From the NCBI GenBank assembly GCA_030390025.1, contig CM059453.1:6262001-6326000 (forward strand): a stretch of 64,000 bases of DNA. Direction: 5' to 3'. Of the stretch, positions 28,771 to 63,879 are shown piece after piece (the stretch's first letter is position 1; every line of letters starts with the position of its first letter). The notes beneath the pieces were generated by a model. The model did not search any database and was not told the DNA's origin. It saw only the letters and a program-made list of their open reading frames with translations. This stretch comes from Squalus acanthias (lineage: Eukaryota). The translations under genes were made by a program, and so were the position numbers.

Positions 28771-29747
28771 TTCCAAAGCTGAAAAATATTGTAAAGATAT
28801 CAGAGATTGGATGAAGATGATTATGCTGTTACAGAAAGTGCACTCCCAACCGGGCAGTAGCTCCATGTCTAACGCAATACATTTTGGTACAGAGCCGAGA
28901 CGAGTTTTAAGATATCGAATCATATGGGAAGGCTGTGACATGTCTGTAAGCTTTTCCTTAGACGCGATCATTCGGTTGGACACCCGGAGATGAAGCATCA
29001 GGAGCCCAGAGTGCACGGCGTGCCAATCCTTCCCATTCTCTCCTTCGCGTACGCTTCCACCTTAGGTGATAAATCAGCTTTAGGTTACACGGGGTGGTAG
29101 TGCTCTTCATTGCACTATCGCTCTCAGCTTCAAACAAATAAGTTAATCAACGAAGCTGAACAAAGTAATAGAGTCGGTCATTGATCAATCTTTGCCGAGG
29201 CAATCCAACTTGTCTCGGTTCGCCGGGTTAGGGAACGGAAAGACATCAATAGTTCCTATCCTTGTTCAGTGGCTCCTGCAAGTGTCCATTTGATCATCCA
29301 GAGAGGACAGGATCAGACTCGAGGCTAATTGGCCTTTCGCAAAATAGCAGATTGAGTGAGGGAGTGGAGGAACCTGACTCCAGTCAAGCGTTCAAGGTAG
29401 ACCAGGATAATATTGTGGCAAATTCTGCCAAGATGAGCTGCGAGCGTTTCCAATGATAGTAAAAACGCAGCTTTTTTCCTGGTTTTTTAAGATTTATTGC
29501 GTTTAGAACAAGAAACTGAAATTTTGGGATTCAGTAAATGCGACCTGTGCAAGTTCTGGTATTTTTCAGGTAAATTTCATATCTGCACATTCGCTCATTT
29601 CTTTGCAATGAACATATCAGTGCCCTTGAGAAAGAGTTGAAAAGTGCAGAGTGGCAGAATTAATGTCTTCGTTCTGCGTCGTCGAGTTGGATATCACTTC
29701 TCGAACGTCACTGTCGGGGTCATTCTCATAATGTTCCCTCTGCAACA

Positions 29748-30200
29748 GAAAAAACACGTGTTAAAGACACACAATTAACACGTGGTTCAGATACACAGAG
29801 AACACGTGGTACAGATACACAAAAATCACGTGGTACAGATACACAAAGAACACATAGTACAGATATAAAAAGAACACGTGGTACTAATGCACAAAGAACG
29901 CGTGGTACCGATACACAAAGAACACGTCGTACTGATACACAAAGAACACGTGACACTGATACAAAAATAACACGTGGTACTGATACACAAATAACACGTG
30001 GTACTGATACACAAAGAACACGTGGTACAGATACACACAGAATACGTGGTACTGATACACAAAGAACACGTGGTTCAGATACACACATAACACGTGGTGA
30101 ATGTACAAAAAGAACACGTGGTACAGATAAAAACAGAACATGAGGTACAGATACACAAAGAACACGTGTTCTAGATACACACAGAACAAGTGGTACAGCT
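29748..30200. repeat. 24-bp minisatellite (AACACGTGGTACAGATACACAAAG), ~19 copies
   Basis: Tandem units directly visible; they produce the 8-aa periodic ORFs in the ORF track. Confidence 0.95.
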
Positions 30201-30849: not shown

Positions 30850-32460
30850 GGGCACTTCGATTAGATTCCAGCCTGTGTCTGTCTCCCGGGCATCTGTTAC
30901 TCTATACATAAACAACCTGCATCTCTTGATTAGATTCCATCCTGTAACTCAGTCCCAGTTATCTGTTATTCTATATATAAACGCCCGAACACCTCGAAAT
31001 ACATTCCAACCTGTAACTCACACCCTGCTATCTGTTATTCTATATATAAACCCCCCGAACCCTTCGATTAGATTCCAGCCTGTGCCTCACTCCGGGGAGT
31101 CTGTTATTCTACATATAAAACCCGCGTAAACCCTCGATTAGATTCCAGCCTGTAACTCACTCCCGAGTATCTCTAATTCTATATATAAACCACCCTAACC
31201 CCTCGATTAGATTCCAGTCTGTAACCTACTCCTGGGTTTCTGTTATTCTATATATTTAACAACACGAACCCCTCAATTGGATTCCAGCCTGTAACTCACT
31301 CCCGGGTAACTGTTATTCCATAAAAAAACAACCCACCCACTCCCCGCGAACCGCTGGATTTGATTCCAGCTTGTAACTCACAACCGGGTATCTGTTATTC
31401 TATATATAAACCTCCGATCCCCTCGATTAAACTCCAGCCTGTAACTCAATCGCGGGTTTCCGTTCTTCTATATATTAACATCACGAAGCTCTCGATTAGA
31501 TTCCAGTCTGCAACTCACTCCGGGTATCTGGTAAGCTATATATAAACCCTCGAACCACTCGATTAGATTCCAGTCTGCAACTAACTCCCGGGTATCTGTA
31601 AAACTATATATAATCCCCCCGAACCACAAGATTAGATTCCAGCCTGTAATTCACTCCCAGTTATCTGTTATTCTATATATACTCACCCCGAACAACTCGA
31701 TTAGAATCGATTCTGCAACTCACTCCCGGATATCAGTTATTCTACATATAAACCCCACGAACTCCTCGATTAGACTCCAGCCTGTTACTCTCCCCCGGGT
31801 ATCTGTTATTCTATATGTAAACCAACCGAACCCCTCGATTAGACTCCAGCCTGTAACTCACTCCCAGGTATATTTTATTCTACATAAAACCCCCGAACCC
31901 CTCGATTAGAATCCAGCCTTTAATTCACTCCTGGGTATCTGTTAATCTATATATAAACCACCCGAACCCCTCAATTAGAGTCCAGCTGTAACTCACTCCC
32001 AGGTATCTTTTATTCTACATATAAACCCTCGAACCGTTCGATTAGATTCCAGCCTGTAATTCACTCCTGGGTACCTGTTATTCTATATATAAACCACCCC
32101 GAACCCCTCGATTAGATTCCAGCCTGTAACTCACTCCCGGGTATCTGTTATTCTATATATAAACCCCCTAACACCTCGATTCGATTCCAGCCTGTGACTC
32201 ATTATCGGGTATCTGTTATTCTATATATAAGCCCCCGAACACCTCGATTCGATTCCAGCCTGTAACTTATTCTCGGGTATCTGTTATTCTAAATATAAAC
32301 CCCGAAACCCTCGATTAGATTCCAGCCTGTAACTCACTTCCGGGTATCCGTGATTCTACATAAAAATCACCCAAAACAATAGATCAGAATCCAATCGCGA
32401 AGTCATTGTTGGGTATCTGTTAATTTAGACATGAGACATTCGAACCTCTTCGTTATATTT
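30850..32460. repeat. ~68-bp tandem satellite, ~23 copies
   Basis: Unit CCCCTCGATTAGATTCCAGCCTGTAACTCACTCCCGGGTATCTGTTATTCTATATATAAACCACCCGAA; degenerate at both ends. Confidence 0.95.
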
Positions 32461-33504
32461 CAGTCCATGACCTACACTTCGCTGTCCTTTTGCCTTTCTA
32501 TAAACAATGCATTTGTTAGATTGGATCCATTAGCGAATGGTTTTGGCTGGTATATGGACTAAAGTTCAACTCTATTCGATTACACTGGGAATACAAGTTG
32601 GAGATAATCTTCAGGAATCATTACTGGTGCCAATGCACACAACACCCAGTGCATCTCAGACCGAGTTCCTCTTTTAGTTCCCCGTTTTATAAGTGCATAA
32701 TATGAAATGGAAAATTACCAGCACTGAAATGATATTGTATTGTATGATAATAATGTACAAATACAGGACTGATTCTGAAATGGCACTGTGGTGATAGTTG
32801 TGCAGTAATAATATACAAGGTTCCATTAACACTGTTAGGATAATAATAACCTGCGAGTGCTAAACTAGCCTTGAAATGATATTTTGTGTCATTCGAATAC
32901 ACATACACAACTTGAAATGACACTCTGATAATCAGTACGAAAGACAAACTAGTTTTCAAATGTCACTGTGTTCAAATAAAGAGTAGGAATTCTAAACAGC
33001 ACGTTTAAAAGGCTTCGTTGTAGATTTTCAACTTGAGCTCGGGGTGAAATTTGGTGTTTCCGGTTGCCCAGGCGATTTAAAATCACATATTTGGACGTCC
33101 ATTAATATTAAACAAATTCCAGCAGAATACAGAGAATCGGAAGGGGGCGAAATGGAAGTGAAAGATAGTTAATCGGGGAATAGCAAAAAGAGCAGAGAAC
33201 GAGTGAACGAGAGAGGGAGAGCAAAGCGGAAGAGGAGATAGAGCGAGCAAATTGCCAACCAGAAGTCCGCAGAGAGAGGTAAGAGAGACCACACTCTCTG
33301 ACCTGCCATGAGAGGTGTGACTGGGGAGATCGAGCATTAAAATATTTGAAGCATGTACCTGATGCAATTCCATCGTAAGTTCCTGTGCCCTCATTTCTAA
33401 AGGGACCTGTCTGTCTGAACTGATCAAACTGTAATTACACCCTCCCGGAAGTTCAAGCAATGCAGCTCCACCAATCTCAGCAGGGAGAAATTACGGTGAA
33501 TCAC

Positions 33505-36500
33505 CTTTGCATATGGTACATAGGCACCAACGATATAGGTAAAAAAGGGGATGAGGTCCTAAAAGCAGAATATAGGGAGTTAGGAGGTAAATTAAAAAAT
33601 AGGACCTCAAAGGTAGAAATCTCAGGATTGCTACCAGTGCCACGTGCTAGTCAGAGTAGAAATAGGAGGATATTTCAAATGAATACGTGGCTAGAGGAAA
33701 GGTGCAAGGGGGAGGGATTCAATTTCCTGGGACATTGGAACCGGTTCTGGCGGAGGTGGGACCAGTACAAACCGGACGGTCTGCACCTGGGCAGGGCCGG
33801 GACCGCTGTCCTAGGGGGAGTGTTTGCTTGCGCTGTTGGGGAGGATTTAAACTAATGTGGCAGGGGTTTGGGAACCTGAGCAGGGAGACAGAGGAAAGCA
33901 TGTCAGGAAGGGACAGAAGGTATGGAGTAAAAGGTAAAGTGTTAAATAAGGAAAAAGCAGGAAGTAAGTGTCGCAAAACACATTTGAAAGTTCTTTATCT
34001 GAATGCACGTAGCATTCGTAACAAAATTGATGAGTTAACGGCACAAATAACTATATATGGGTATGATCTTGTGGCCATTACAGAAACATGGCTGCAGGGT
34101 AACAACGTCTGGGAATTAAATATGCCAAGGTATTTAACAATCAGGAAGTACAGGCAGGAAGGAAGGGGAGGGGGGGGGGTGGCTATGTTATTAAAGGAAG
34201 GAATCACTGTAATACAGAGAAATGATATTGGGTCAAAAGATCAGGATAATGCAACAGTTTGGGTAGAGATTAGGAATAATAAGGGGAAAAAAACACTGGT
34301 GGGCGTAGTATATAGGCCTCCTAATAGTTGCAACTCTGTTGGAAGAAGTATTAATCAGGAAATAGTTGGGGGATGTAATAAGGGAACAGCTATAATTATG
34401 GGGGATTTTAACTATCATATTAACTGGACAAATCAAATTGGGCAGGGCAGCCTTGAGGAAGAGTTTATTGAGTGTCTTAGGGATGGATTTCTTGAGCAGT
34501 ATGTAACTGATCCTACAAGGGGGCAAGCAACCTTGTAACTGGTACTGTGTAATGAGTCTGGATTAATTAATAATGTCCTAGTTAAGAATCCCCTTGGAAT
34601 GAGTTAACATAACATGGTTGAATTCCATATCCAATTAGAGGGTAAGAAGGTTGGTTCTCAAACAAGCATACTGAGCTTGAATAAAGGAGACTATGATGGT
34701 ATGAGAGCAGAATTGATTAAAGTGGACAGGAAAAAATAGATTAAAGGGTAAGACGGTACAGGAGCAGTGGTGTTCATTCAAGGAGTTATTTTACAACCTT
34801 CAAAATAAATATATTCCACTGAGGATAAAAGGGTGTAAAAGAAATGAAAGCCATCCATGGCTAAGTAAAGAAATTAAAGAAAATATCCAACTAAAAACAA
34901 GGACATATAAGGTAGCCAAAGTTAGTGGGAGGATAGAAGATTGGGAAGTCTTCAAATGACAACAAAAAGTAACTAAAGGATTGATTAAGAAAGGGAAAAT
35001 AGACTATGAAAATAAATTAGCAAAAAATATAAAAACAGATAGCAAGAGTTTCTATATTTATATAAAAAGAAAAAGGGTGGTTAAGGCAAACGTAGGTCCC
35101 TTAGAGGATGAGACCGGGAAATTAATGGTGGGAAACATGGAGATGGCAAAAATGCTGAACAAATATTTTGTTTCAGTCTTTATGGTAGAGGACACTAAGA
35201 ATATCCCAACACTGGACAAACAGGGGGCTCTAGTGGGGGAGGAGCTAAATGCGATTAAAATTACTAAGGAATTGATACTCAGTAAAATAATGGGACTCAA
35301 GGCGGATAAATCCCCTGGACCTGATGGCTTGCATCCTCGGGTCTTGAGGGAAGTGGCAGTAGCAATTGTGGATGCTTTGGTAATAATTTTCCAAAACTCC
35401 CTGAACTCAGCAAAGGTCCCGGCAGATTGGTTAACTGCTAATGTAACACCCTTATTTAAAAAGAGTTGTAGGCAGAAGGCTGGAAATTATAGACCAGTTA
35501 GCCTAACATCTGCGGTGGAAAATTTTTTGGAGTCTATTATTAAGGAGATAGTAACGGAACATTTAGATAAACATAATTTAATAGGACAAAGTCAGCATGG
35601 CTTTATGAAGGGGAAGTCATGTCTGACAAATTTGCTCGAGTTCTTTGAGGACATAACGTACAGGGTTGATAAAGGGGAAACAGTGGATGTAGTGTATTTA
35701 GACTTCAAGAAGGCATTCGACAAGGTGCCACATAAAAGATTATAACTCTAGATAAAAAATCACTGGATTGGGGGTAATATTCTGGCATGGGTGGAGGATT
35801 GGTTATCTAAGAGGAAGCAGAGAGTTGGGATAAATGGTTCATTCTCGGAAGGGCAACAGTAGCCAGTTGTGTTCCGCAGGGGTCGGTGCTGGGTCCCCAA
35901 CTCTTTACAATCTATATTAACGATTTGGAGGAGGGGACCGAGTGTAACATATCAAAGTTTGCAGAGGATACAAAGATGGGAGGGAAAGTAGAGAGTGAGG
36001 AGGACATAAAAAACCTACAAGGGGATATAGACAGGCTGGGTGAGTGGGCAGAGATTTGGCAGATGCAATACAATATTGGAAAATGTGAGGTTATGCACTT
36101 TGGTAGGAAAAATCAGAGAGCAAGTTATTATCTTAATGTCGAGAAACTGGAAAGTACTGCAGTACAAAGGGATCAGGGGGTCTCTGTGCAAGAAAATCAA
36201 AAAGTTAGTATGCAGGTGCAGCACGAGATCAAGAAAGCCAATGGAATGTTGGCTTTTATTGCTAGGGGGATAGAATATAAAAACAGGGAGGAATTGCGGC
36301 AGTTGTATAGGGTATTGGTGAGACCGCACCTGGAGTACTTCATACAGTTTTGGTGTCCATACTTAAGAAAAGACATACTTTCTCTCGAGGCAGTACAAAG
36401 AAGGTTCACTCGATTAATTCCGGGGATGAGGGGGTGGACATACGAGGAGAGGTTGAGTAGATTGGGACTCTACTCATTGGAGTTCAGAAGAATGAGAGGC

Positions 36501-36995
36501 GATCTTATTGAAACATATAAGATTGTGAAGGGGCTTGATCGGGTGGACGCGGTGAGGATGTTCCCAATGATGGGTGAAACTAGAACTAGGGGACATAATC
36601 TTAGAATAAGGGGCTCCTCTTTCAAAACTGAGATGAGGAGAAACTTTTTCACTCAGAGGCAAGTGGGTCCGTGGAATTTGCTACCCCAGGCAGCTGTGGA
36701 AGCTACTTCATTAAATAAATTTAAAACAGAAATAGACCGTTTCCTAGAAGTAAAGGGAATCAGGTGTTAAGGGGAGCGGGCTGGAAATTGGACATGAGTT
36801 TGAGTTCGGATCTGTCAAGGCCCTGTGGGTGGCGGAGCGGGCCCAGGAGCCGAGTGGCCTGGTCCTGCTCCTGCTTCTTGTGTTCTTTAGAGTTGAGGTT
36901 GGATCAGATCAGCCATGATCTCATTGAATGGCGGAGCAGGCTCGAGGGGCCGATTGGTCTGCTCCTGCTCCTATTTCTTACGTTCTTATGTACTT
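33505..36995 (+). mobile_element. Near full-length CR1 (HER1-like) LINE: ORF1 SGNH-esterase portion plus ORF2 endonuclease/RT, inactivated
   Basis: IGTNDIG...DGLHL (esterase); LNARSI, ITETWL, YRPP, GDFN (endonuclease); QHGF, YLDFKKAFDKVPH, FAEDTK (RT); several stops and frameshifts; ttcttatg tail. Confidence 0.95.
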
Positions 36996-38354: not shown

Positions 38355-38920
38355 ACTGGAGTACTGCGTACAGTTTTGGTCTCCTTATTTCAGGAGGGAT
38401 ATACTTGCATTGGAGGCAGTTCAGAGATGATTCACTAGGTTGATTCCTGGGATGAAGGGGTTGTCTTATGAGGAAAGGTTGAGCAGGTTGGACCTATACT
38501 CATTGGAGTTTAGAAGAATGAGAGGTGATCTTATTGAAACATATCAGATTCTGAGGGGGCTTGACAGTGTAGATGCATAGTTGATGTTTCCACTCGGCGG
38601 GGAATCTAGAACTAGGGGGCATAGTTTCAGAATAAGGGCTCGCCCGTTTAAAACGGAAATGAGGAGGAATTACTTCTCTCAGAGAGCCATGAATCTTTGA
38701 ATTCTCTACCCCAGAGAGCTGTGGAGGCGGAGTCATTGAATATATTCAAGGAGGAGATAGACAGATATTTGAGCTACAGGGGAGTGAAAGGTTATGGGGA
38801 GAGAGCGGGAAAGTGCAGTTGAGGCCAAGATCAGATCAGCCATGATCTTATTGAATGGCGGAGCAGGCTCCAGGGACCGAATGGCCTTCTCCTGCTCCTA
38901 TTTCTTCTGTTCTTATGTTT
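38355..38920 (+). mobile_element. CR1 LINE 3' fragment inserted at the ancestral stop codon of gene A
   Basis: ctggagtactgcgtacagttttggtctcc...ttcttatgtt tail; antisense to gene A. Confidence 0.9.
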
Positions 38921-39011
38921 AATTGGAGCATAATCGCTGTTCTTCTCATTTGGGCTATATGGTTCATTATTGCGGATGTGTGAGACATTGACAGTCACGT
39001 ACACAATCTCT

Positions 39012-39059
39012 TCATTCTGAGCAGTTTGCATCATTTGCGGGGCTCACGTGATCGTCCCT
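39012..39059 (-). CDS. Gene A last coding exon as spliced (RDDHVSPANDANCSE*); ITIM/ITSM-like motifs lie out of frame downstream
   Basis: Acceptor ttacag|; phase 0 from the previous exon gives TGA at 39014-39012. IVYVTV (39007-38990) and SDYAPI (38938-38921) are in another frame. Confidence 0.7.
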   Translation of the reverse strand, partial: RDDHVSPANDANCSE

Positions 39060-39349
39060 CTGTAACGAAAGACATTCGTGTTAGATGTGGCGCTATTGCA
39101 GATATAGAGCTGAACAAGTTGGGAGTGCGCTGTCTGCACCAGAGCAAAGCTAACTATTTAATCTCTGGTAATTTTCTAATATGCGTCTTGAGGTCTTGAT
39201 TCAAGAAATAAATAACTTCCAATTTTTTATCAGAGGAAGTTGCTGAGGCTGTTAAAAAGCTTACGGGATTCATAGATTTATAATAAATCCACCGAGTACA
39301 AAACACACAAAACATCCTACAATTGTCACTCCAGCTTGGCTTCACTTAC

Positions 39350-39428
39350 CTCTCCGTTTAGAACCTCAGTGTACACCATCGCACCACTATCGGTTTTCGG
39401 CACACATGCAGTCTCACTGCTCTTCTTC
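39350..39428 (-). CDS. Gene A cytoplasmic exon 1 (RKKSSETACVPKTDSGAMVYTEVLNGE)
   Basis: ttttttag| and |gtaagt; phase 2 to 0, consistent with the TM exon. Confidence 0.8.
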
Positions 39429-39759
39429 CTAAAAAAATAACAAATAAAAATGATGCACATTTCATAGATAACTGGAAAGTTTACTTAATGTATACTGTGA
39501 AGGACGTTCGTAGGTCAGGTCGGACCTATGTCTTTTACGTTTTCTGATCAGCACAGACCACGTCCGCTCTCCAATTCTTTTCAATTTCCATCTGCCTACA
39601 TTTCAAAAGGGAACTGTTGTCTTTATCATTGAAGCTGGTTAATGGCGCGGTGTTGCTTGCTCATGGTGAAAGCTGATTGTGCTGATTGGACATAGGAGGA
39701 TCATTGTATATGTTAACACCTTATTAATTAGCAGATGGAAGAGTTTCAACGTGCAAACA

Positions 39760-40575
39760 CATTACAATCTATGATTACTAGATCCATAACGCTTTCAGTT
39801 AGTGCATTTCAAATGCTAACCACTTTTTGCTTAAAAAAAGTTTGTCCTCATGTCGCCTCTGGTTCATTTGCCAATCGCCTTAAACCTCTGCCTCTGGTTA
39901 ACGACCTTTCAGGCATTGTAATCAATTTATCATTATTTACTTTATCTAAACCCTTCATGATTTTGAACAAATCTATCATATCTCCTCTTAGCCTTCGCTG
40001 CTCTAAGGAGAACAGCCCCTGCTTCTCCAGCCTATCCACATAACTGTAATCCCTCATCCCTGGAACAATTCTAGTAAATCTCATCTGCACCCTCTCCAAA
40101 GCCTTCACCTCCTTCCGATAGTGTGGTGCCCAGAATTGGACAGAATACTCCAGCTGGGGCCGAACCAATGTTTTCTATAGGTTCAGCACAACTTCCTGGC
40201 TTTTGTACTCTGTGCAACTATTTATAAAGTCCGGGCTTCCATAATCTTTATTGACTGCTTTTTTAACCTATCCTGCCAATTACAAAGTGCCGTGCACTAG
40301 CAGCCCCACGTCTGTCTGTTCCCGCACCCCCTTTAAAATTGTACCATTTAGCATGTGTTGTCTCTCCTCATTCTTCCTACCCAAATCTAACACCTGACAA
40401 TTTTCTGTGTTGACTTTCATCTGCCATGTGTCCACCCATTCCACCAGTCTGTCTGTCACTTTGAACTCTATTACTATCTTCCTCACTGCTCAGTACACTT
40501 CCACGTTCGGTGTTATCTGCAAAGTTCGAATTTGTGCCCTGTACCCCCAAGGCCAAGTCATTAATATATATCAAA
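39760..40575 (-). mobile_element. CR1 LINE 3' fragment (intronic)
   Basis: IYINDLALG, FADNTE, VRPQLEYSVQFWAPHYRK. Confidence 0.88.
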
Positions 40576-41699
40576 ATTTGAGTGTGAAATGGGGAATAAA
40601 TCAATTTCCCTCAATAACCACTTTGAGATCCTTCCTCAGTATCTCTGAATAAGCTTTTATATATTAGTTAGCATGGAATTGGCATATTTAATATTGTCAT
40701 GGTATATGAAGGGTTATAATCGAGCACCACTCACAAGAGTGCTCTAACTCATCTTGTTATGTTTCTGGCCGAACCATTGGCTGTTGTGGAGGGCGCCTAC
40801 CTGAGGAGCCCGTCACTGATTTCAATTGTAAACATCGTTTGTGATTTGTTGAAGAGTAATTTTGGTTTGCAGCACATTGTAATCCGAATAGATATAATTG
40901 GAATTCACTTGGAGCCATTCACCTCCTTGAAGCTAATTATCAGCCTATCCAATAAAAGCGGGATTCTGTCGAGAGCTTTCAGTGAGAGCTAGTCAGGCCA
41001 AATAGATTAAGTCACTGGTAAGAATAAGATAACGAGCCCAACATAAATAATCGTTTATATCATACTTTAGCACATCAGTCACACCCAATTTTGAAATATA
41101 ATATTCTACTCCTGGAGCCAAACAAACAGACCCACTACTGTAAACATATGTGTCACGTTAATTTTACTATTTTTTTGTTGTTTTACTGTTTGCTGGACGT
41201 GTTTGATTATTAGAACTTAATATCATTCTGGTTAAGTGTTATGCTGGGAGCCTGACATGGCAAGGAGGCTTGTGTGAGGGTGCCCCTTAAAACCAGCAGC
41301 AGAAACTAACTGAACGGGTTTCTCTGTCCATTCTTTGATAATACTGCGAATTTTATCTAGATTACACGATAGGTGAATACAATCCCTGGCACATAGCGCG
41401 CCAGCGATCAGAAGTCCAAAAATGTCAGTTTAAACATAAGGAAACAAAGCGCAATAATATAACAAGAAGAATGCACAGATAGCCTCATTCAAGCAGCCAC
41501 TAATATTACTCTACAGCTGATGCTGGGAGATGCGAGCTACTGGTCAGGTGACGATTGACCCTCCTCCTTTCCGCTTCGATTCAGGCAGGTGCTCACTCTA
41601 CTCACGGGAGATTAATTTCAACGAGCTTTTTTTACACGGAATTTCTGATGCAGGATCCCCTTTAAAACTCCATTCTATGTAATTAGGAATCACTCCTAC

Positions 41700-41793
41700 C
41701 TTTGTATCTTCAGCAGGAGCACGACTGCAATTAGTAACACAATCCCAGTGGCTCCTCCTCTTATGATGAGAAGAATTGTCCTGGAGAATATTC
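41700..41793 (-). CDS. Gene A transmembrane exon (GIFSRTILLIIRGGATGIVLLIAVVLLLKIQ)
   Basis: ttttttag| and |gtagga; hydrophobic run followed by basic residues; phase 1 to 2. Confidence 0.85.
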
Positions 41794-42596
41794 CTAAAAA
41801 ATGGAAAGAAACATTGCTGTACCTTAGGGAAGTGGATTTAAACAACAATTTTCGAAGCACATTTATGAGTGTGAGGTATCAAGTTTCCTTTTTGTTCGGA
41901 TCAGAAAGCTAATGGAAAGTGAGGCACTCCGCTTGTCTCAACCTTGCGAAAAAGCATTTTATTCATGTGTTGCGGCCTGGCATAAATTTGAAATAAATAA
42001 TTTAAAATTCGCTGGTGTAAAAATCATAATTGAAAAATGAAGTTCACGCGAAAACCCACCCTCGGAAAAACAGTGGGGATAAACCAATCAGAATACCGGC
42101 CTGGCAAGATCACCAGTTACAGCGGTACGATTTATAATCTATAGAGATAATTCAGATTCACATAGGTTATTAAATATCGGCTTTACATACTTAAATGAGT
42201 CTGAACAAGATAGAAATGAGCATGTACACACAATAGGGCAGATTGCAGTTTGCAATCATGTATTAAGTGTAATTTGGATTATCTAAAGGGTTTATCTTAA
42301 TTCAGAAGAATTTGTTTTCCAAGATCACAGGCTACTTCTGGTGTTCAGATAATTTCATCATATCTAAAAATATAAACCGAAACAGTTTCAGAAGACTGAA
42401 AGTTTAAAAGGATAATGCCGACCGCAACTTTAAGTTGGTGATTGAAAATAGGTCCTTACACTAATTCGAGATCGATTCCGAAGTACCTGCTGACTGGAGC
42501 TGGTATTTGCTGACACTAACACCGTTCAGTTAGTGACTGACCAGTCATGGACTAACTCCATTATAGTATTACATTACAAATAGATTAAACATGTAC

Positions 42597-42884
42597 CCTT
42601 AGCGTGGAGCTGGTATTTACTGACAGAATCACCGTGCTCGTTTGCTGCAACACAAGAGATCAGGTTTCCGGTTCCGGTTGGGTGAGTCAATCTCAGGGAG
42701 CTCTCCATGAGGTGACTATTCACCGCCCAGGAGATGATTTCCACATCTGACCTGTCCCCAGTGTGGATTCTCCCATTGAGGCCCCACGTGATGTTTCCCG
42801 GGGGATTGGCTCTGATCCGGCAGCTACAATTCGTCCAATTCGCAGAGCTGGTGCATGTCGGGCCTGATAAAATTGTCGGTTTAT
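42597..42884 (-). CDS. Gene A membrane-proximal Ig domain exon
   Basis: DKPTILSGPTC...NCSCRIRANPPGNITW...ISCVAANEHG; 288 nt, phase 1-1. Confidence 0.88.
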
Positions 42885-43808
42885 CTAAAAAAAAAGGAAA
42901 CTTCAATAGGAAATGATCATGTAAACAGCTGTAGTTTCGAAATACAATTAAGTAATGAGTTGAACTAACCATCATAGTTCTGGTTGTTATATTTTAAGAT
43001 GAATCAGTCTATGTTGCACTAGTTCATGGCATATTATATCTTCACTTATAACATGTGAGCTCGTTAGGAAGACTTCCATATTAAATCCAATGAGTGTTCG
43101 TTCCATCAATACCTCTCCTGACAGATGTCGCGAGGGACCCTCAGACGGAGCTAGCTCAGAGATTTGATTATGTATAATATACCCACAAACGTGTCTCACA
43201 CGTCACTGTTTTAAAAGGTCAATTCATGTCAATGTTTTCACTAGGTGTACTGTGTTCAAGATCTTTATTTGTGGTGGAATGACGTGATTCTTCAATAAAC
43301 GTACGGCTAGCAAGGCAACACTTCAAAGAACCAAGTCTCGGAATATTACACTAATAACTCAAAATTAATACAAGGAACAGGAGTTGGCTTAACACAATTT
43401 ATCACACTTTTTTAGAGAGAATTTGTGCTCATCACATTGCTACAAGTCAGATCTAAGGATTGGAAAATTGTCTATTTCAGACGACAAGTATAATTTATGA
43501 ACAATTAGTTGTAGAGTAAAGGTCCCAGTAAATGTGCTTGTGTCGCAACCTCATAAATGTAAGACCTGCTGCATTTATGAGACATTGTGCCATATTCCAC
43601 TACTGTCATATTGAGCGAGAGGCCAGGTTAGTTTCCATTATTGGAGCCACCGAAGTAGTTTGCCGCTATTTTCGCGGAAGGGGTGAAACTATCCCAAAAG
43701 CATGCACATGGGCGCCTTCCCGCAAGCAGGCAAGAGAAAACTGTAATTTAATCCAGAGTTCGTGAAATGAAAGGCTACTATCTAATTGATAAATTAATAC
43801 ATACTTAC

Positions 43809-44066
43809 ATTGTACTGAAATCTGTGTGGAGCGATTTGTGGTGCCCAGGGCATTTTCAGCTATGCACCAATATTCACCGTCGTCCTCAGAACGAATGTTG
43901 CGGAATATCTGCTTTAGTTCACCAATGGATGATCTGCTGGTATCTTCACCATTTTTCACCCATCTTAAGCTGACCAGGGGTTTCCCATCGGCCGTGCAGT
44001 ATAATAATAACGAACTTCCTTCCACAGCTACTATAGAGGAGTTGACGGTTGGGATGTTCGGTCCAT
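43809..44066 (-). CDS. Gene A C2-set exon 2
   Basis: EGSSLLLYCTADGKP...W...EDDGEYWCIAENALG; 258 nt, phase 1-1. Confidence 0.92.
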
Positions 44067-44651
44067 CTGAAACAGGCGTTAATGCAAAACGTGATTGTCG
44101 AGTAAGCATTATTGAGCTCCTAATTAATTCATTATATTGGGTATGGGGATCGGGCGGGAAATTGAAGTTGAGTTCCATGATCAGCCATGATTGCCGGAGT
44201 GGCAGAGCAGGCTCGAAGGGCCGTATGGCCTACTCCTGTTCCTAATTCTTAAATTCTTATTAAGCCCAAACAGAGCTGAGATCTGATGTCATAATAACAG
44301 ATCCTAACTCGGCATGGCCTTTGTTGCTTCCATTTATGACTGACTAAACTCATAACCTGACTGGAAATTCACAGAATAAAGATTAACAATCACTTAAAAA
44401 AATATGTTGGAGGCACCATCATTGATACATGGATATGAATGATTCTAATGTAATATCACTGGTGAGAATTAGATGAGAGCCATTGCGAACCGTTGATTAT
44501 CGAAATGAGCTCTCCTGGTAAAGAGGCTGCGCTTTTCATGATGCATCCGTTGATGCAGTTCTAATCCCGAATAAATTACTTGTGTAAAAGTGCAAATTTT
44601 GAGCCCGTTGGCCGACAGGATAAGTCTGTTTACTTTAGACCGGACACTTAC

Positions 44652-44963
44652 ATTTAATCTCCAAAATAAGATTTTGTGCTGAAGGAGAAGGAATTCCATT
44701 AATTAGAATTGTGCATCCCAGAATGTTCCCGTCATGAGCAGATGATGGAGTGAAGGTCAGCACGGATGAAACTTTCCGAGATTCTGAATGTTCTTTGATC
44801 ATTCCTTCTCCTTCTTGTGTATCCCACGGAAGAGGAAGGGACACATTGTACTTAATCCACCTCAGTTGCAGGGTGCCATTCCAGCAGTTGTGTGTGATGG
44901 AACAGGTGAATCGTGCAGTTTTTCCAGCGATCAGTTCGCCATAGCTTGAAATACGTGGCGTTT
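44652..44963 (-). CDS. Gene A C2-set exon 1
   Basis: FTCSITHNC...W...SSVLTFTPSSAHDGNILGC (Siglec domain-2 signature with extra Cys); 312 nt. Confidence 0.92.
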
Positions 44964-47138
44964 CTATTAAAACGGGAGAAAACCAGCGTGTTAGGTACAT
45001 TTCAACGTTAGAACGGGCGAGTGTTGGCTTCCAGCTAAATGTGAGAAGGACGTGAAATGAAAATTACATTTAGTTCCTTTTTGTCTGCTGCGTGTTGCAA
45101 GTGTGTTCAGCACTCTGAATTACTCCTCGCAGTTGTAATGTAGTTTTATGCCTCATCGGGTAACATATGTTCCGACTTTATGTTAAACTTTAGTCGTTTT
45201 TTCTCCTAACTTATCTATATCATGGATATGATAGCTGTAGACCAGTGAACCAACGTTAACTCCTCAAATGTCACGAATATTTCATCCTCTCGTATACCTC
45301 GTTCTGCACCGGCAATTGACTATGTGATGGTGATTAATGCAGACCCAGAGAGATCTCGATTCTGTTTTCAAGAAACGTCAATATAGAACGACAATGCTCA
45401 AGACATGGAGAGACCAGACAAAGGATTGATAACACCACCGCGTGTGGGAGAAGCAGAGCAGGTTCCTCGGGTGGAAATCTGCAGAAGGCTTCTGCAGAAA
45501 TAGTATTTGTAGCCGTGGGATTTGAATGAACAAATAAATTATAACTTGAACTGATTTTCACGTTACTCAAATTTCTAATTTTTAATTAAGATCTAATTAA
45601 AAGCGGGGTAAATGAGCGCTGGATAGGGAAAGGCACGAACAAAGACTGAATTAATTCACCGCTTTTTAAGTACTCGCGACGTCAAAAGACGCTTCACCAA
45701 AAAGTTACTTGAAATATAATCAGGCAGACATTGCCGACGGTAAAACAGGAGATTATTGGAAAAGTTATTAAGATGTTTGGAATTAAGGATAAGGTAGAAA
45801 TTGTAATACAAACTGTTTAGAAGGGACGAAGCAGCGAGTCGCTGTTAAGCGCAGTTGCTCAGAATAGTTGGATCCCAGTACGGTGTCCCACAGGGCTGTC
45901 CTGTGGTTTTGCTTCTACTCACTGTGTGCATCAATAATTTGGAGAAAGGGCTAAAGAGAATGATGTCAAAATTTCCCGCAGGAATTAATTGGATTCCATC
46001 AAAATGAAAATTGGGCGGGTTGTACAATGAGAGGCGCATCCAATATCGCCAGTTTTACACCCATGCCAACCTTGCAAGTGCAACTCCCAGGAGATAACTA
46101 GAGAATTAAGCGAGTTACAAACGGATACTGGAGATATAGTAGAATGGGGATATTAGAGGCAGATATAATTTAAGGTCAGAAAATATGTGGTGGTAGATGT
46201 TAATTTGAACCGTAGACAGCTGGGAGATGTGGAAGAGCAGAGGCATTTGGAGTCAGCTTCATAAGACAGTAAAAGTAGCACCTCCAGTGGGAAAGTGTAG
46301 GAAGATGTTTCTGGAGCTCGCGGTTTAACGGCAAGAGATCAATAATATAAATTCGAGAATAGTGGAGATTCTAACGAGAACAGTAGTTAGTTCACAGTTG
46401 GAGTAAGAATGCGGGTTTTGGGCTCCAGACTACAGGAAGAATTTACTGCGGATTCGCGTAGTTTCTGGCTGGTATGATGATGTATGAATACCAAGCAAGT
46501 ATTTAATAATTGGGGCAGATCTTATTGGGCTAAAACAGACTTTGGGATGATTTGACAGAAGTTCTTAAACTTATTAAGCAACAGGACAGAGGAGATAGAG
46601 CAGACTGAAGTAGAATTTGAAATGGCCGCCCTGGTCAACACTCTCATTCCAGATAAGTCACTCATTCTAGCAACCGCCCAATTTCATTACCATTCATTTC
46701 ATTGGAAATAATAAGCTGCTGGTTTATGTGTTGTAAGTACGACCAACAACGTCAGTTTTAGGTTCAGTCAACACGTATTAATCTATCCTCATGTGGACAT
46801 TTTCAGAATCGGCTCGACAGGTGTTTGAAGGGAATTGCAATAAAGCGATATGGGAACTGAGCAGGCACATGCGATTCGGAGTGTTGCTCATGTGAAGGAC
46901 AAACAGCAACACGGACTGGCTGGGCGGAAGGGCCTGTTTTACTTTTGTAATTTCTATATACTTCTGTGTTTAGGATATCAGACATCTGCGTACCTCATCA
47001 GTATCCCTGCACCCTTTGTTTCAACTGCCCTTTGAGATCGGTCAGGGATATTATAATATTTTCCCACTTTGCACATAGGTTGATTCATACTGAAGCACTG
47101 GAGTGAAAATGTACAAAAGGAACAAAGGGAAAACTCAC

Positions 47139-47512
47139 CTAATACAGAAAGAAATGTGTGAGCACGCAGAGTGCGAAGTCCCTTAATATGCCTGGACGAA
47201 GCGTTCGCGATGAAGAGTTGGTATATACCCTCATCACTCTTCCTGATATCCTTTAGTAGGAGGTAACATTGTTTCTTTAAACACTTGAACTCAGCTCTTC
47301 CAAGATAGTTATAATGCTGCCTGAATGGTAGTTTAGAATCAAAGATAATGGGGAAACCTAGTTTACCAGGAACATGTCCCTCTTTAACCACGTCACATCA
47401 CCGATTCTCTGATAGACTGGATAATTAAACGTACACCGGATCTTTGCACATGAACCGGCCACCGCCGTCACAACTTTTGGTATCATCACAGAGAATTCAG
47501 CACTAAAAACAA
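47139..47512 (-). CDS. Gene A V-set exon (1-bp deletion at 47378-47380)
   Basis: GSCAKIRCTFNYP...TWLKR/GHVPG...GRAEF...QCYLLLKDIRKSDEGIY; aligns with 60151-60531. Confidence 0.88.
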
Positions 47513-48139
47513 CTGAGAAGAATAAATTAGACACCCTTTAATTAGCCATTCAAAATGCATTTCAGCATCTTTATCATCCATTAAAGTATTTGTTAATTGA
47601 CAAATAATCGCCATTCACAATAGCAATTAAAATATCAGTGAAGGTCTTTTCAAAATCAAGAAAAAATACGAAACAAAATCCAATCACAACACCTATTGAA
47701 ATGATCATAGGAATAACTATTTAATGGGAGATTTATGAACCGATAATATACATATTTAATACTCATCTAAAAACCGAATACATATCAACTAACATGTAAG
47801 GGAATGCCCATTAAAAATTCTCATTAAATATAGCTTAAAATATTGATCAAAATAAATATTAAACATCTATTGAATCTCCTTTGAATTACTCAATCAATAT
47901 GAAGTAAATGTTATTAAATGTGCATTACAATAAAATAATTTGAAAATCCATGTATTTAAACATTATTTGAATAGGCTGTATCCGCTATAATACAACAACA
48001 ACGCACGCGTTAAACAATCATGAAATTCCTATTTCACAAGTTCTGAAATCAATAACAAAAAAATCATTCATATTCGTTATTTTGCTGTTCCTTTTCCACA
48101 ATCACTTGCAGAAATTGTAAAAAAGCATCACAAATGTAC

Positions 48140-48182
48140 CTTCTGTCAACATTATGAGAGGCAGCAGCACGCAACTCCTCAT
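48140..48182 (-). CDS. Gene A leader exon (MRSCVLLPLIMLTE)
   Basis: gccATG, 43 nt, |gtacat donor; near-identical to 59470-59512. Confidence 0.88.
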
Positions 48183-48858
48183 GGCTCTAAACTGCTGCCG
48201 ATTTCACTCGCTAAATGAAGACCCCAATTCACAATTTACACCATTCAGATTTCAGCTTTCTTCTTTCCAGTCACTTCTTGGATTTCTTTGCTAATCAGCA
48301 TCAGACTATCGGGGAAGTTTGATTCGGTTGCTGCCAATGTGTAGGAACAGTGCTCACTCAATCAGCTCCGTTGGTGAGGTAGGCAGCTAGCACATCTTGT
48401 ACATGGGCTGCGTGTGACCGCCTGTTAAAAATATGATGTTATGGTATTTTTAACCGTTTCAAAAAATACTTAATTTCGAAACAACATCTCTCTCTCTCTC
48501 GAACAAACTCACACAAACACCAAATGTACTGTTATTTATGATATTGATATATTGGCGTCTGTGTCAGATTGGCACCGCCCACGCTTGCAGACGCCTCTGA
48601 CACACATTTCACACATATTTCGCTTTCTGGCAGCTAATACGAGATGAATGTTGGAGAGTGGTTAACTACAGTCAGTTAGGTTGCTGCAGTCTGTGAACGT
48701 GTGGTTTCGTCACCTTCTTTAAGGAGCGCTGCAATATGCATCTGTGACGTTTTAGATAGGAGCTGTTTGACAGTAAACCGTTTGACGCTGTGGTAAACAG
48801 CCTTTCTTCTAAATATTTAACTCTTTGCATTCACACTCAAGCTCAGTAATTTTGCAGA

Positions 48859-50442: not shown

Positions 50443-50606
50443 CTATTCTGCAACACACTCATGGATATTATGCAGTGTACCAGCCCTGCCGCTGTAGCCT
50501 GTGACTTGGGCCGAGAGTAACATGAAATCTTTACATTTTATGCTCAAGTTAATTGGCACTGAGGAGATGGAAGATAATCTATAAAGGAACAATTCAAAAA
50601 ACTTAC

Positions 50607-51397
50607 ATAAAATAGGAAGTGTGACCTTAGACCCGGAAGAAAATCCTTCTGTTGTATTCTGGGCGGTGATGATCTTCAATATGAAATAACAGTCACCTTG
50701 ATCGCACTTGCTGATGTCCTTCAACCGTAAGGAACATTGTTTCTTTACAAATTCGGCGGTGAACTGAGCTCGCCCTCCATATTTCAAGGGCACGTTATCT
50801 GAATCCCGGGAATCATAGATAATCGAGACCCCTGAGGTTCCAGGTCAGGAACCTCCTTTAACCACATACCCTGTGGACTAAGGCCAGAGGCGGGATAATC
50901 AAATGTACACGGGATCTCTGCACATGACCCGTTCACCGCCGGCACCTTCACAGACCATCGGGAACTATGGACAACTGGTGAAAAAACAGAAATTAAACAC
51001 CCATTAAACACCCATTGAAATTCGCAATATTATAGCAATTTAAACATACCCTGACCGTCAAGTTAAATACTATTAATTTAACCTTTAAACACCCACTAAC
51101 ATATTCATTAGTACATCTAATGAAATTCGTGCAATTTTCTCCAAAACTCTTTAAATTCTATTAAATATTCCATTTCAAACTAATAAATCATAGCGTAATT
51201 ATCAAATCAATCCTATATAATACATAATAAAGTTCCAAATAAAACATACATTAAATACGAACTGTGTGAATGCACAAATGATTGACTAACCGTATGTTTT
51301 GTCTAAAATATTATTATTTTGTCTGAGAAAAATTATTAAAAATGAATATTTTACCTTCGCTAAATATCCGAATGGAAATACATCTAATAATCTTCAT
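50607..51397 (-). pseudogene. Siglec-like pseudogene C (leader 51397-51355; frameshifted V-set exon 50974-50607)
   Basis: Leader MKIIRCISIRIFSE, 43 nt, with GT donor. V exon GSCAEIPCTFDYP...W / GRAQF...KKQCSLRLKDISKCDQGDCYF is 368 nt (out of frame). No C2 exons before the gene A upstream region. Confidence 0.85.
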
Positions 51398-57239: not shown

Positions 57240-57660
57240 CATAAGGTCATAGGTAATAGGAGCAGGAGTAGGCCATAAGGGCCCTCGAGCCTGCTCCACC
57301 ATTCAATAACATCGTGGCTGATCTTCGACTTCAACTTCACTTTCACTCCCAATCTCTATACCCGTTGAGTCCCTTGATATCCAAAAATCTAGATCAGCCT
57401 TGAATATACGCAACAATTCGGCATCCACAGCGCTTTGGGATAGAGAATTCCAAAGATTCATAACCCTCTGAGTTAAGAAATTCCTCGTCTTCTCAGCCTT
57501 AAATGGCCGGCACCTTATCCTGAGACTATGCCCCCTAGTTCTAGACTCTGCTGCCCGGGTAAACAACCTCTCAGCATCTACCCTGTCAATCCCCTTCAGA
57601 ATCTTATATGTTTCAATGAGATCACCTCTCATTCTTCTAAACTCCAGTGATTATAGTCCC
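57240..57660 (-). mobile_element. CR1 LINE 3' end
   Basis: MRGDLIETYKILKGIDRVDAERLF...RTRGHSLRIR. Confidence 0.9.
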
Positions 57661-59469: not shown

Positions 59470-59512
59470 ATGAGGAGTTCCGTGCTGCTGCCTCTCATAA
59501 TGTTGACAGAAG
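59470..59512 (+). CDS. Siglec-like gene B leader exon (MRSSVLLPLIMLTE)
   Basis: gccATG, 43 nt, |gtacat donor. Confidence 0.9.
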
Positions 59513-60150: not shown

Positions 60151-60531
60151 TTGTTTTTAGTGCTGAATTCGCTCTGCTGATGCCAAAAGTTGTGTCGGCG
60201 GTGGCCGGTACATGTGCAGAGATCCGGTGTACGTTTGATTGTCCAGACTTTCGGGGAATCGCGGGTGTGACGTGGTCAAAGAGGGGACCTGGTTCTGGTA
60301 ACCCCGGCTTCTCCATTATCTATGATTCTAAATATCCATACGGGCAGCATTATAACTATAGTGGAAGAGCTGAGTTCACGGGCAAAATTGCAAAGAAACA
60401 ATGTTCCCTCCTGCTAAAGGATATCAGGAAGAGTGATGAGGGTACATACCAACTCAGCATCGAGATCGCTTCGGACAGGTCTACTAATAGACGTCGCACT
60501 CTGCGTACTGACGTATTTCTTTCTGTTTTAG
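60151..60531 (+). CDS. Gene B V-set exon (intact)
   Basis: 381 nt, phase 1-1; GTCAEIRCTF...W...GRAEFTG...QCSLLLKDIRKSDEGTY Siglec V-set cysteine pattern. Confidence 0.93.
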
Positions 60532-62722: not shown

Positions 62723-63034
62723 AAAAGCCAGAGATTTCAGGTTCTGGGGAATTGATCGCTGGACAAACTGCACGATTGACCTGTTCCGTCACGCACAACT
62801 GCCCGGATGGCAACCTGAAACTGAAGTGGATTAATTACAATGTGTCCCTTCCTCCCCCAATGGATACTCAAAATGGAGCAGAAATTAAAAATGAAAGTTC
62901 AGGTTCTCGGAAAGTTTCATCCGTCATCATCTTCACACCATCATCTGCTCATGACGGGAAAATTCTGGGATGCTCAATTCTAATTGATGGTATCCCAACT
63001 CCTTCAGCACAAAATCTTACCTTGGAGATTGAAG
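62723..63034 (+). CDS. Gene B C2-set exon 1
   Basis: 312 nt; LTCSVTHNCP...SSVIIFTPSSAHDGKILGC. Confidence 0.93.
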
Positions 63035-63621: not shown

Positions 63622-63879
63622 ATGGACTGGAAATCCCAACCGTCAACTCCTCTATAGTAGCTGTGGAAGGAAGTTCATTATTATTATACTGCACGGCCTG
63701 TGGGAAACCCCTGGTCAGTTTAAGATTTGTGAAAAATGGTGAAGAGATGAGCAAATCATCCACCGGTGAACTAAAGCAGTTATTCCCCAGCATTCGTTCT
63801 GAAGACGACGGTGAATATTGGTGCATAGCTGAAAATGCTGTGGGCACCAAAAACCGCTCCACACAGATTTCTGTACAAT
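63622..63879 (+). CDS. Gene B C2-set exon 2 (gene continues beyond the window)
   Basis: 258 nt; EGSSLLLYC...EDDGEYWCIAENAVG; |gtaagt donor. Confidence 0.93.

What the first reader, a model, noticed from the sequence alone, without database searches (positions are those of the whole stretch)
38921..41793. Gene A shows the signature of an inhibitory-to-activating switch: a candidate paired Siglec-like receptor system
Seen: the TM segment TILLIIRGGATGIVLLIAVVLLL has an Arg (AGA, 41761-41759) near its outer end. With canonical splicing the tail stops at 39012 (..ANCSE*). Removing one A from the AAA at 39027-39025 restores ..NDATAQNEEIVYVTV..SDYAPIKHK, an ITIM plus an ITSM-like motif, the standard inhibitory Siglec tail. 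Known: activating partners in paired families (Siglec-14/16, LILRA, KIR-S) have a TM basic residue for DAP12 or FcR-gamma and lack ITIMs; an outer-leaflet Arg is typical of FcR-gamma partners. Inference: independent origin of an activating member in a cartilaginous-fish cluster, with B as the possible inhibitory mate. Caveats: MVYTEV remains in frame, and the changes could be pseudogene decay.
Basis: partly seen in the sequence, partly recalled or inferred. Interest (0 to 1): 0.85.

Follow-up and report, generated by a model that had tools for sequence, protein, structure and literature searches.

The report
Broken shark Siglec-like receptor gene
Gene A is a copy of a shark inhibitory Siglec-like immune receptor whose tail has lost its inhibitory motifs by a frameshift, but its ligand-binding exon is frameshifted too, so it is most likely a young pseudogene and not a working activating receptor.

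Summary
The TM exon (41793-41700, minus strand) encodes TILLIIRGGATGIVLLIAVVLLL with Arg codon AGA at 41761-41759. With canonical splicing the tail stops at 39014-39012. The +1 frame encodes IVYVTV and SDYAPI.

The shifted frame is the ancestral one. It matches the C-terminal tails of 13 of 171 fetched shark Siglec/MAG-like proteins at E<1e-3 (best 3e-9); the frame-0 peptide matches none. The Arg is derived: Gly stands opposite it in 11 of 12 aligned family TM segments.

It has GGG (47380-47378) where paralog B has GGGG, giving a stop at 47360-47358. A LINE-derived repeat also replaces the last two codons and the stop of the ancestral tail.

Relatives with intact ITIM tails carry R or K in the same outer TM region (P0002, P0156), so the Arg does not discriminate.

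Best reading: a recently inactivated copy (0.7). First-stage notes report similar paired-Siglec claims elsewhere in this genome.

The parts
48140..48182 (-). Gene A leader exon: ATG at 48182, MRSCVLLPLIMLTE, ends in phase 1, GT donor at 48139-48138
   Evidence: A/B alignment; coordinates
47139..47512 (-). Gene A V-set exon, 374 nt (not a multiple of 3; B's is 381 nt). One base is missing relative to B at the G-run 47380-47378, and 6 nt are deleted in frame near 47282. In the frame set by the leader the stop is TAG at 47360-47358
   Evidence: In tblastn, all 3 relatives tested split the exon into frame -3 (47522-47382) and frame -2 (47388-47140)
44652..44963 (-). Gene A Ig2 exon, 312 nt, open, phase 1-1
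43809..44066 (-). Gene A Ig3 exon (I-set/Ig_3), 258 nt, open
   Evidence: Pfam Ig_3 7e-12 and I-set 2.9e-11
42597..42884 (-). Gene A Ig4 exon, 288 nt, open; 73-74% identical to P0159 and P0003
41700..41793 (-). Gene A transmembrane exon, 94 nt. Arg codon AGA at 41761-41759, opposite a conserved Gly in relatives
   Evidence: X3 contig 41664-41826 shows no difference at the Arg codon
39350..39428 (-). Gene A cytoplasmic exon 1 (..ETACVPKTDSGAMVYTEVLNGE). MVYTEV stands where relatives have the first ITIM (VIYSTV, VTYAAV). Ends in phase 0
39012..39059 (-). Gene A cytoplasmic exon 2 as read after canonical splicing: RDDHVSPANDANCSE, stop TGA at 39014-39012. The AAA run is at 39027-39025
   Evidence: The exon start E|RDDHV resembles ..TE RNDQY (P0159) and ..TE SDEQY (P0003) at the matching place in the relatives' tails
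38918..39022 (-). Remnant of the ancestral tail in the +1 frame: AQNEEIVYVTVNVSHIRNNEPYSPNEKNSDYAPIK, with motifs IVYVTV and SDYAPI
   Evidence: blastp against 171 fetched proteins, best 3e-9; tblastn frame -1 at 39022-38915
38490..38917 (+). Repeat related to the 3' end of the LINE at 33.4-37.0 kb. Its end abuts the coding sequence and replaces the last two codons and the stop of the ancestral frame
   Evidence: Copies at 57240-57659, 36465-36991, 13553-13862, 17702-17866 and 26052-26126; heads compared; loose ends at 38918-38921
60151..60531 (+). Gene B V-set exon, 381 nt, a single open frame. Ser stands where sialoadhesin has its sialic-acid-binding Arg
   Evidence: Pfam V-set 9.8e-14 and Ig_CD22 5.3e-6; PDB sialoadhesin 8e-10 and MAG 4e-8
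62723..63034 (+). Gene B Ig2 exon
63622..63879 (+). Gene B Ig3 exon. The rest of B lies beyond the window
50446..51029 (-). Lone V-set exon relic, also split between two frames

Best explanation
Gene A is a recently inactivated copy (a pseudogene, or at least a null allele in this haplotype) of a 4-Ig, ITIM-bearing Siglec-like receptor gene. This family is expanded in sharks. A arose with B by an inverted duplication.

Shown:
- A one-base loss in the V-set exon ends translation 51 codons into that exon.
- The last exon is out of frame with the family's two C-terminal tyrosine motifs.
- A LINE-derived repeat has replaced the end of the ancestral reading frame.

Inferred:
- The TM Gly-to-Arg change (GGA to AGA), the V-to-M change in the first ITIM and the 6-nt deletion in the V exon are further changes of a copy no longer under full constraint.
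- Any transcript would carry an early stop and would probably be degraded.
For: 1. V exon. It is 374 nt against 381 nt in B, with GGG against GGGG. Three shark relatives each align to it in two different frames, but to B's V exon in one frame. The stop is at 47360-47358.
2. Tail. The shifted frame matches 13 of 171 fetched proteins at E<1e-3, and frame 0 matches none. The exon start E|RDDHV resembles the matching stretch of relatives' tails (..TE RNDQY..TE SDEQY), so the break lies inside the exon.
3. The repeat boundary at about 38917-38920 removes the ancestral 'xx-stop' that follows ..YAPIK.
4. The Arg is one transition away from a conserved Gly. 8.1% (16 of 198) of single-base changes in the TM core would create K or R, 6 of them at the GGA Gly codons.
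5. Basic TM residues coexist with intact ITIM tails in P0002 (R) and P0156 (K).
6. Pseudogenes are common here: of the 4 V exons in the window, only B's is intact.
7. At family-conserved columns A alone differs at 4 of 67 and B alone at 1 of 67.
Against: - Six of the eight exons are open, with correct phases and splice sites.
- Exons have fewer indel events than non-coding DNA: 2 in 1016 columns against 25 in 4202. A keeps most conserved residues. Inactivation must therefore be recent, or the breaks could be allelic or errors.
- Both breaks lie next to short homopolymers (GGG, AAA). No read evidence was obtained for the V-exon site, because it lay outside the single read-laying run.
- The Arg sits 16 residues above the cytoplasmic boundary, as does the Arg of the ITIM-less family member P0079. 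A real switch would predict this.
Confidence: 0.7

Rival explanations
1. Gene A is, or recently was, a true activating derivative. An inhibitory ancestor gained a TM Arg for an FcR-gamma-type adaptor and lost its ITIMs by a tail frameshift. This is the route described for activating KIR and Ly49. On this reading the V-exon frameshift is a later or polymorphic null mutation (as in human SIGLEC16P), or an assembly error.
For: - The polarity of both changes is as the model predicts.
- The Arg lies in the N-terminal part of the TM, 16 residues from the inner boundary, as in the ITIM-less family member P0079. FcR-gamma partners carry an Arg there (PMC1440944, passages).
- Activating receptors arise from inhibitory ones and are short-lived (PMC2213150, abstract). 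SIGLEC16P is a frameshifted null allele of an activating Siglec (PMC5701461, passages).
- The A/B V exons show dN/dS 2.96.
- Gene A is otherwise well preserved.
Against: - The V exon is broken in the sequence given.
- MVYTEV stays in frame, and the canonical tail is still 42 residues long.
- R or K in the outer TM occurs in relatives with intact ITIMs (P0002, P0156).
- The family's ITIM-less members use a different TM/tail type (..FPIRV.., MNSHR..).
- No RNA contig lay on any exon.
- The gene was picked out after the fact from a family with 87 first-stage notes in this genome.
Confidence: 0.17
2. Gene A is an intact inhibitory receptor. On this reading the two frame breaks are assembly errors in short homopolymers, or the tail is rescued by the downstream acceptor ..ctgctcag|AATGAAGAG (exon start 39016), which puts IVYVTV in frame after phase 0.
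For: - Both breaks sit at GGG or AAA runs.
- The alternative AG gives an in-frame join.
- The canonical acceptor is only moderately pyrimidine-rich: 11 of 20, against 9 of 20 for the alternative.
Against: - Three-base runs are rarely miscalled.
- No indel was listed at 39025-39027 in 4 runs (coverage not proven).
- The canonical acceptor gives a peptide start resembling the matching stretch of relatives' tails, and several AGs precede the alternative one.
- The repeat insertion at the 3' end is a structural change that no base-calling error explains.
- An alternative acceptor does not mend the V exon.
Confidence: 0.06
3. Gene A makes a V-less isoform. Skipping the broken V exon keeps the frame, because the leader ends in phase 1 and Ig2 starts in phase 1. 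The product would be a 3-Ig molecule with a TM Arg.
For: - All Ig exons are phase 1-1.
- Relatives' gene models lacking one Ig domain exist (P0002 lacks Ig3, P0003 lacks Ig2).
Against: - There is no transcript evidence.
- No relative among the 34 family proteins lacks the V domain while keeping an N-terminal leader (not counted formally).
- Such a product would lack the ligand-binding domain.
Confidence: 0.03

Closest known systems
Shark 'sialic acid-binding Ig-like lectin 8/12/13/14' and 'myelin-associated glycoprotein-like' gene models. Examples: P0159 Pristiophorus japonicus UPI00398EA648; P0008/P0156 Heptranchias perlo XP_067831324/XP_067831356; P0002/P0003 Heterodontus francisci XP_067883557/XP_067874525
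   Same: - Same exon and domain order: leader, V-set with the GxCxxIxCTF and KKQCSLLLKDIRKSDEG motifs, Ig2, Ig3, Ig4, a GGG-type TM, and a tail with VIYxxV, (I/V)(V/L)Yxx(V/I) and xEYAxIK motifs.
- 44-74% identity per exon.
   Different: - Gene A's V exon and last exon are frameshifted.
- Its TM has Arg for Gly.
- Its tail end is replaced by a repeat.
- No protein of the window's own species was among those fetched (best exon identity 74%).
Human SIGLEC16 / SIGLEC16P with SIGLEC11 (PMC5701461; abstract and passages read)
   Same: A Siglec-type gene next to a very similar paralog, disabled by a small frameshifting deletion in exon 2 that gives a very short product.
   Different: - SIGLEC16 has a proven functional allele and proven activating signalling.
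- Here no intact allele, no adaptor and no expression are shown.
- A and B are 11% diverged, not homogenised by conversion.
Activating KIR and Ly49 derived from inhibitory homologues (PMC2213150; abstract read)
   Same: The direction of change is the same: an inhibitory ancestor, a new basic TM residue, loss of ITIMs, and a short evolutionary life ending in loss.
   Different: - A different receptor family and lineage.
- In gene A the functional intermediate stage is only conjectured.
Mustelus asterias pair P0079 (XP_078093181) and P0016 (XP_078093182), with Cetorhinus maximus P0044
   Same: Same family. P0079 has a TM Arg 16 residues above the inner boundary and a 10-residue tail without a tyrosine motif. 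P0016, with the neighbouring accession number, has near-identical Ig domains and ITIMs.
   Different: - Their TM/tail is a distinct, conserved type (..F(P)IRV.., MNSHR..), not the GGG type with a point change.
- They are gene models with open frames.
- That the two genes are neighbours is inferred only from their accession numbers and shared contig length.

Membership tests
Siglec (I-type sialic-acid-binding lectin) | N-terminal V-set domain of Siglec type, followed by C2-type Ig domains | tested here: met
   B's V exon: Pfam V-set 9.8e-14 and Ig_CD22 5.3e-6; nearest solved chains are JAML 5.5e-10, sialoadhesin 8e-10 and MAG 4e-8. A's V exon shows the same motifs, but in two frames.
Siglec (I-type sialic-acid-binding lectin) | Essential arginine in strand F that binds the sialic acid carboxylate | tested here: not met
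   In the alignment to sialoadhesin, B has Ser opposite the Arg of ..YNFRFE... In the family alignment, A has Phe at that column (YQLFIA). 'Siglec-like' is therefore a statement about fold and family, not about sialic acid binding.
Siglec (I-type sialic-acid-binding lectin) | Binding of sialylated glycans | not testable with these tools
   Needs a binding assay.
Shark 4-Ig ITIM-bearing Siglec/MAG-like family | Homology across the V, Ig2, Ig3, Ig4, TM and tail exons | tested here: met
   tblastn of P0159, P0008 and P0003 on the window; exon-wise blastp; 34 of 171 fetched proteins have the Ig4-type domain.
Activating paired receptor (associates with DAP12 or FcR-gamma) | Basic residue inside the TM helix | tested here: met
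   Arg is residue 7 of the 23-residue hydrophobic stretch. The 16 residues after it are too few to span a membrane on their own (the membrane argument is inference).
Activating paired receptor (associates with DAP12 or FcR-gamma) | No ITIM in the cytoplasmic tail | tested here: inconclusive
   The two distal motifs are out of frame. MVYTEV stays in frame; Met at position -2 is outside the usual S/I/V/L set (consensus recalled).
Activating paired receptor (associates with DAP12 or FcR-gamma) | Open reading frame through the ligand-binding ectodomain | tested here: not met
   V exon of 374 nt, with a stop at 47360-47358.
Activating paired receptor (associates with DAP12 or FcR-gamma) | Physical association with an ITAM adaptor, and expression | not testable with these tools
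The one possible RNA run (X10) laid only on repeats.
Pseudogene | Disruption of a frame that is open in functional relatives | tested here: met
   Two frame breaks plus loss of the ancestral stop. Not confirmed by reads at the V-exon site.

The most novel reading that the evidence does not exclude
Gene A may record one turn of a birth-and-death cycle of activating receptors in a cartilaginous fish. An inhibitory Siglec-like gene would have been converted by a single Gly-to-Arg change in the outer TM plus a tail frameshift. It would then have been silenced, perhaps only in some haplotypes, by a V-exon frameshift, as with human SIGLEC16P. That would place the recurrent formation and loss of activating receptors from inhibitory ones, known from primate KIR and rodent Ly49, in sharks as well. 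It would stand beside an older, conserved activating TM type in the same family (P0079, P0044).
Probability: 0.2. Interest if true: 0.6.

Novelty: new member of a known kind. Interest (0 to 1): 0.3.

Why it matters
As it stands, this is an ordinary outcome for a fast-evolving immune receptor cluster: one more dead copy.

The context is what makes it useful.
- Sharks carry a large family of Siglec-like receptors that lack the sialic-acid-binding Arg.
- Their V domains diverge faster than the introns.
- By NCBI gene models, the family already contains ITIM-less members with a TM Arg next to ITIM-bearing twins.
- My three full-text searches found no paper describing this family in cartilaginous fish.

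A survey of the whole family would say far more about the age of paired receptors than this one gene can. The survey would need to record which members are intact, which TM type they have, and which adaptors they use.

Tried and rejected
- **Read check of the A-run.** Only Logan contigs were available. They are short, many come from paralogs (most laid pieces are 95-99% alike), and the bin holding the site is swamped by the repeat. The result is 'no indel listed, coverage unproven'.
- **Search for ORF fragments of A's V exon in the 5.8-billion-protein collection.** The aim was to see whether another sample reads through the frameshift. There were 3 candidates and none was significant, so no information.
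- **Closer relatives (full-length queries P0008 and P0159).** The aim was proteins of the window's own species. The searches gave 21 and 11 proteins, none closer than 74% per exon, so the indel could not be placed at the DNA level. The linker before AQNEE is 6-9 codons shorter than in relatives. The break may therefore come from a deletion whose length is not a multiple of three, and not from a slip in the A-run.
- **Alternative acceptor at 39016.** Considered and judged unlikely (reasons are given under the rivals).
- **Relaxed-constraint test.** A-only changes at conserved columns were 4 of 67, against 1 of 67 for B. The numbers are too small to decide.
- **dN/dS.** V 2.96, Ig2 0.81, Ig3 0.64. 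This shows diversifying change in the pair but cannot say which copy changed, or whether A is alive.
- **Literature.** Three searches found nothing on shark Siglec paired receptors. Supplementary files were not opened, and none bears on a claim here.
- **Notes of the scan.** Used as leads only.
- **B's TM and tail.** They lie outside the window and are unreachable.
Full report
**What is in the sequence**

Gene A lies on the minus strand and has eight exons:

| Exon | Coordinates |
|---|---|
| Leader | 48182-48140 |
| V-set | 47512-47139 |
| Ig2 | 44963-44652 |
| Ig3 | 44066-43809 |
| Ig4 | 42884-42597 |
| TM | 41793-41700 |
| Cytoplasmic exon 1 | 39428-39350 |
| Cytoplasmic exon 2 | from 39059 |

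- The TM exon encodes IFSRTILLIIRGGATGIVLLIAVVLLLKIQ, with Arg codon AGA at 41761-41759.
- After canonical splicing the tail reads ..AMVYTEVLNGE|RDDHVSPANDANCSE and stops at TGA 39014-39012.
- From the AAA run at 39027-39025 the +1 frame reads TAQNEEIVYVTVNVSHIRNNEPYSPNEKNSDYAPI.

**What family it is**

- B's intact V exon matches Pfam V-set (9.8e-14) and the CD22 first-Ig model (5.3e-6).
- Among solved structures it is nearest to JAML, sialoadhesin and MAG.
- A search of 1.84 billion representative proteins gave 309 hits at E<=0.001.
- The near ones are NCBI gene models named Siglec-8/-12/-13/-14 or MAG-like. They come from Heterodontus, Heptranchias, Pristiophorus, Carcharodon, Cetorhinus, Mustelus, Scyliorhinus, Stegostoma and Chiloscyllium.
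- None is from the window's own species; the best exon identity is 74%.
- B has Ser and A has Phe where sialoadhesin has its essential Arg. The family is therefore Siglec-like in fold, but is not shown to bind sialic acid.

**The tail**

- The shifted-frame piece of A matches the C-terminal tails of 13 of the 171 fetched proteins at E<1e-3 (17 at E<0.02; best P0159, 56% identity, 3e-9). Each match ends about three residues before the relative's C-terminus.
- The frame-0 peptide matches nothing (best E 0.78).
- The ITIM-bearing frame is therefore ancestral.
- The exon start E|RDDHV resembles the matching stretch of relatives' tails (..TE RNDQY in P0159..TE SDEQY in P0003). This suggests the canonical acceptor is the old one and the break lies inside the exon.
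- The stretch before AQNEE is 6-9 codons shorter than in relatives. The event may therefore have been a deletion whose length is not a multiple of three, and not an extra A. Removing one A is only one way to restore the arithmetic.
- A downstream AG (exon start 39016) would also put the ITIM in frame. It is preceded by several other AGs and a poorer pyrimidine tract.
- The end of the ancestral frame is gone as well. A repeat related to the 3' end of the LINE at 33.4-37.0 kb begins at about 38917-38920, right after ..YAPIK. It replaces the last two codons and the stop. Contig loose ends at 38918-38921 agree.
- MVYTEV stands where relatives have the first ITIM (VIYSTV, VTYAAV), with Met for Val at position -2.

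**The TM arginine**

- Twelve family TM segments align over their full length. They comprise six distinct sequences from five species. Gly stands opposite A's Arg in 11 of them and Leu in 1.
- The codon is AGA beside two GGA codons, so one transition made the change.
- 16 of the 198 possible single-base changes in the TM core (8.1%) would create K or R, and six of those are at Gly codons.
- The Arg is residue 7 of the 23-residue hydrophobic stretch. Only 16 residues follow it, so it must lie inside the helix, in the outer part. This last step is inference.

Two facts pull in opposite directions.
- For the switch: the ITIM-less family members P0079 (Mustelus) and P0044 (Cetorhinus) have an Arg at the same distance (16 residues) from the inner boundary. 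FcR-gamma partners carry an Arg in the N-terminal part of the TM (PMC1440944, passages).
- Against it: P0002 (R) and P0156 (K) have a basic residue two positions further out in the same GGG-type TM, and they keep intact ITIM tails. In this subfamily a basic outer-TM residue therefore does not mark an activating receptor.

- A's V exon is 374 nt; B's is 381 nt.
- A lacks one G of B's GGGG (A has GGG at 47380-47378) and has a separate in-frame 6-nt deletion.
- In the frame set by the leader, translation stops at TAG 47360-47358.
- The conserved second half of the domain (..IIFDSK..KKQCYLLLKDIRKSDEGIYQ..) is in another frame.
- P0159, P0008 and P0003 each align to A's V exon in two frames and to B's in one.
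- As assembled, A therefore cannot make a receptor of any kind.
- Two further V exons in the window are broken too: 50446-51029 (minus strand) and 26814-27170 (plus strand).

**How old is the damage?**

- A and B form an inverted duplication, 43687-48858 against 64000-58794, at 88.6% identity.
- Introns differ by 8-11%. The V and Ig2 exons differ by 15-17%.
- dN/dS is 2.96 for V, 0.81 for Ig2 and 0.64 for Ig3. The pair has therefore undergone diversifying change.
- Exons carry 2 indel events in 1016 columns, against 25 in 4202 non-coding columns.
- A alone departs from family-conserved residues at 4 of 67 columns, B at 1.
- Six of eight exons are open with correct phases. A was therefore constrained for most of its history, and inactivation is recent.

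**Reads**

- Four runs were laid on 38850-44800. All are Logan contigs: X1 and X3 from one sample, X5 from another, and X10 guessed to be RNA.
- No indel is listed at 39025-39027. Twelve are listed elsewhere and one row is hidden.
- Contigs cover 38927-38959 and 39163, but coverage of the site itself is not shown.
- An X3 contig (41664-41826) differs at four bases and one intronic T. It shows no difference at the Arg codon, so the Arg exists in a second individual or in a close paralog.
- The possible RNA run laid only on repeats, so there is no evidence for or against expression.
- The V-exon site was outside the stretch.

**Verdict**

- Most likely (0.7): gene A is a young pseudogene, or a null allele, of an inhibitory Siglec-like receptor.
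- Second (about 0.17; 0.2 in the wider form given as the novel case): it passed through, or in other haplotypes still is, an activating derivative. That would fit the model that activating receptors arise from inhibitory ones and are short-lived (PMC2213150, abstract) and the case of human SIGLEC16P (PMC5701461, passages).
- Unlikely (about 0.06): an intact inhibitory gene with assembly errors.

First-stage notes of this scan list many similar 'paired Siglec' claims elsewhere in this genome. They are unchecked and were not counted as support.

Noticed in passing
43687-48858 (minus strand) against 58794-64000 (plus strand): Genes A and B are the two arms of an inverted, head-to-head duplication, 88.6% identical over 5.2 kb including introns and the 5' flank. 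The V and Ig2 exons (15-17% diverged) are more diverged than the introns (8-11%), and V-exon dN/dS is 2.96.
   Followed up: yes
50446-51029 (minus strand) and 26814-27170 (plus strand): Two lone V-set exon relics of the same family. The first is split between two frames. The second has an in-frame stop and a deletion. No further family exons were found next to them.
   Followed up: partly
Proteins P0079 (XP_078093181) and P0016 (XP_078093182) of Mustelus asterias; P0044 of Cetorhinus maximus; P0169 of Stegostoma tigrinum: By NCBI gene models, the shark family already contains ITIM-less members with a TM Arg or Lys and short tails. P0079 has near-identical Ig domains to the ITIM-bearing P0016, which has the neighbouring accession number. 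This looks like a real activating/inhibitory pair, with a conserved TM/tail type (..PIRV.., MNSHR..) shared between Carcharhiniformes and Lamniformes.
   Followed up: partly
41664-41826 and about 97 listed sites in 38850-44800: Contigs of both DNA samples differ from the window at about 2% of unique positions, often in all contigs. One TM-exon variant has Val-to-Phe and Leu-to-Phe changes. This could mean a very polymorphic locus, a different haplotype, or close paralogs laid on A.
   Followed up: no
33424-36991 (plus strand): A LINE with endonuclease (Exo_endo_phos 7.8e-9) and reverse transcriptase (RVT_1 5.4e-10 and 9.4e-8) in three frame-shifted pieces. Its 3' end is the repeat found at 38490-38917, 57240-57659, 13553-13862 and other places. 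A reverse-transcriptase tail fragment also lies in A's intron, at 39851-40610 (minus strand).
   Followed up: partly
29745-30198 and 30857-32372: Two tandem arrays: a 24-nt unit in 18.9 copies and a 69-nt unit in 21.9 copies.
   Followed up: no
50-376 and 4648-4974 (minus strand), with ORFs at 1768-4070 between them: Two nearly identical 109-codon open stretches lie 4.6 kb apart. They flank three long open frames without Pfam matches. This may be the terminal repeats and interior of a retroelement.
   Followed up: no
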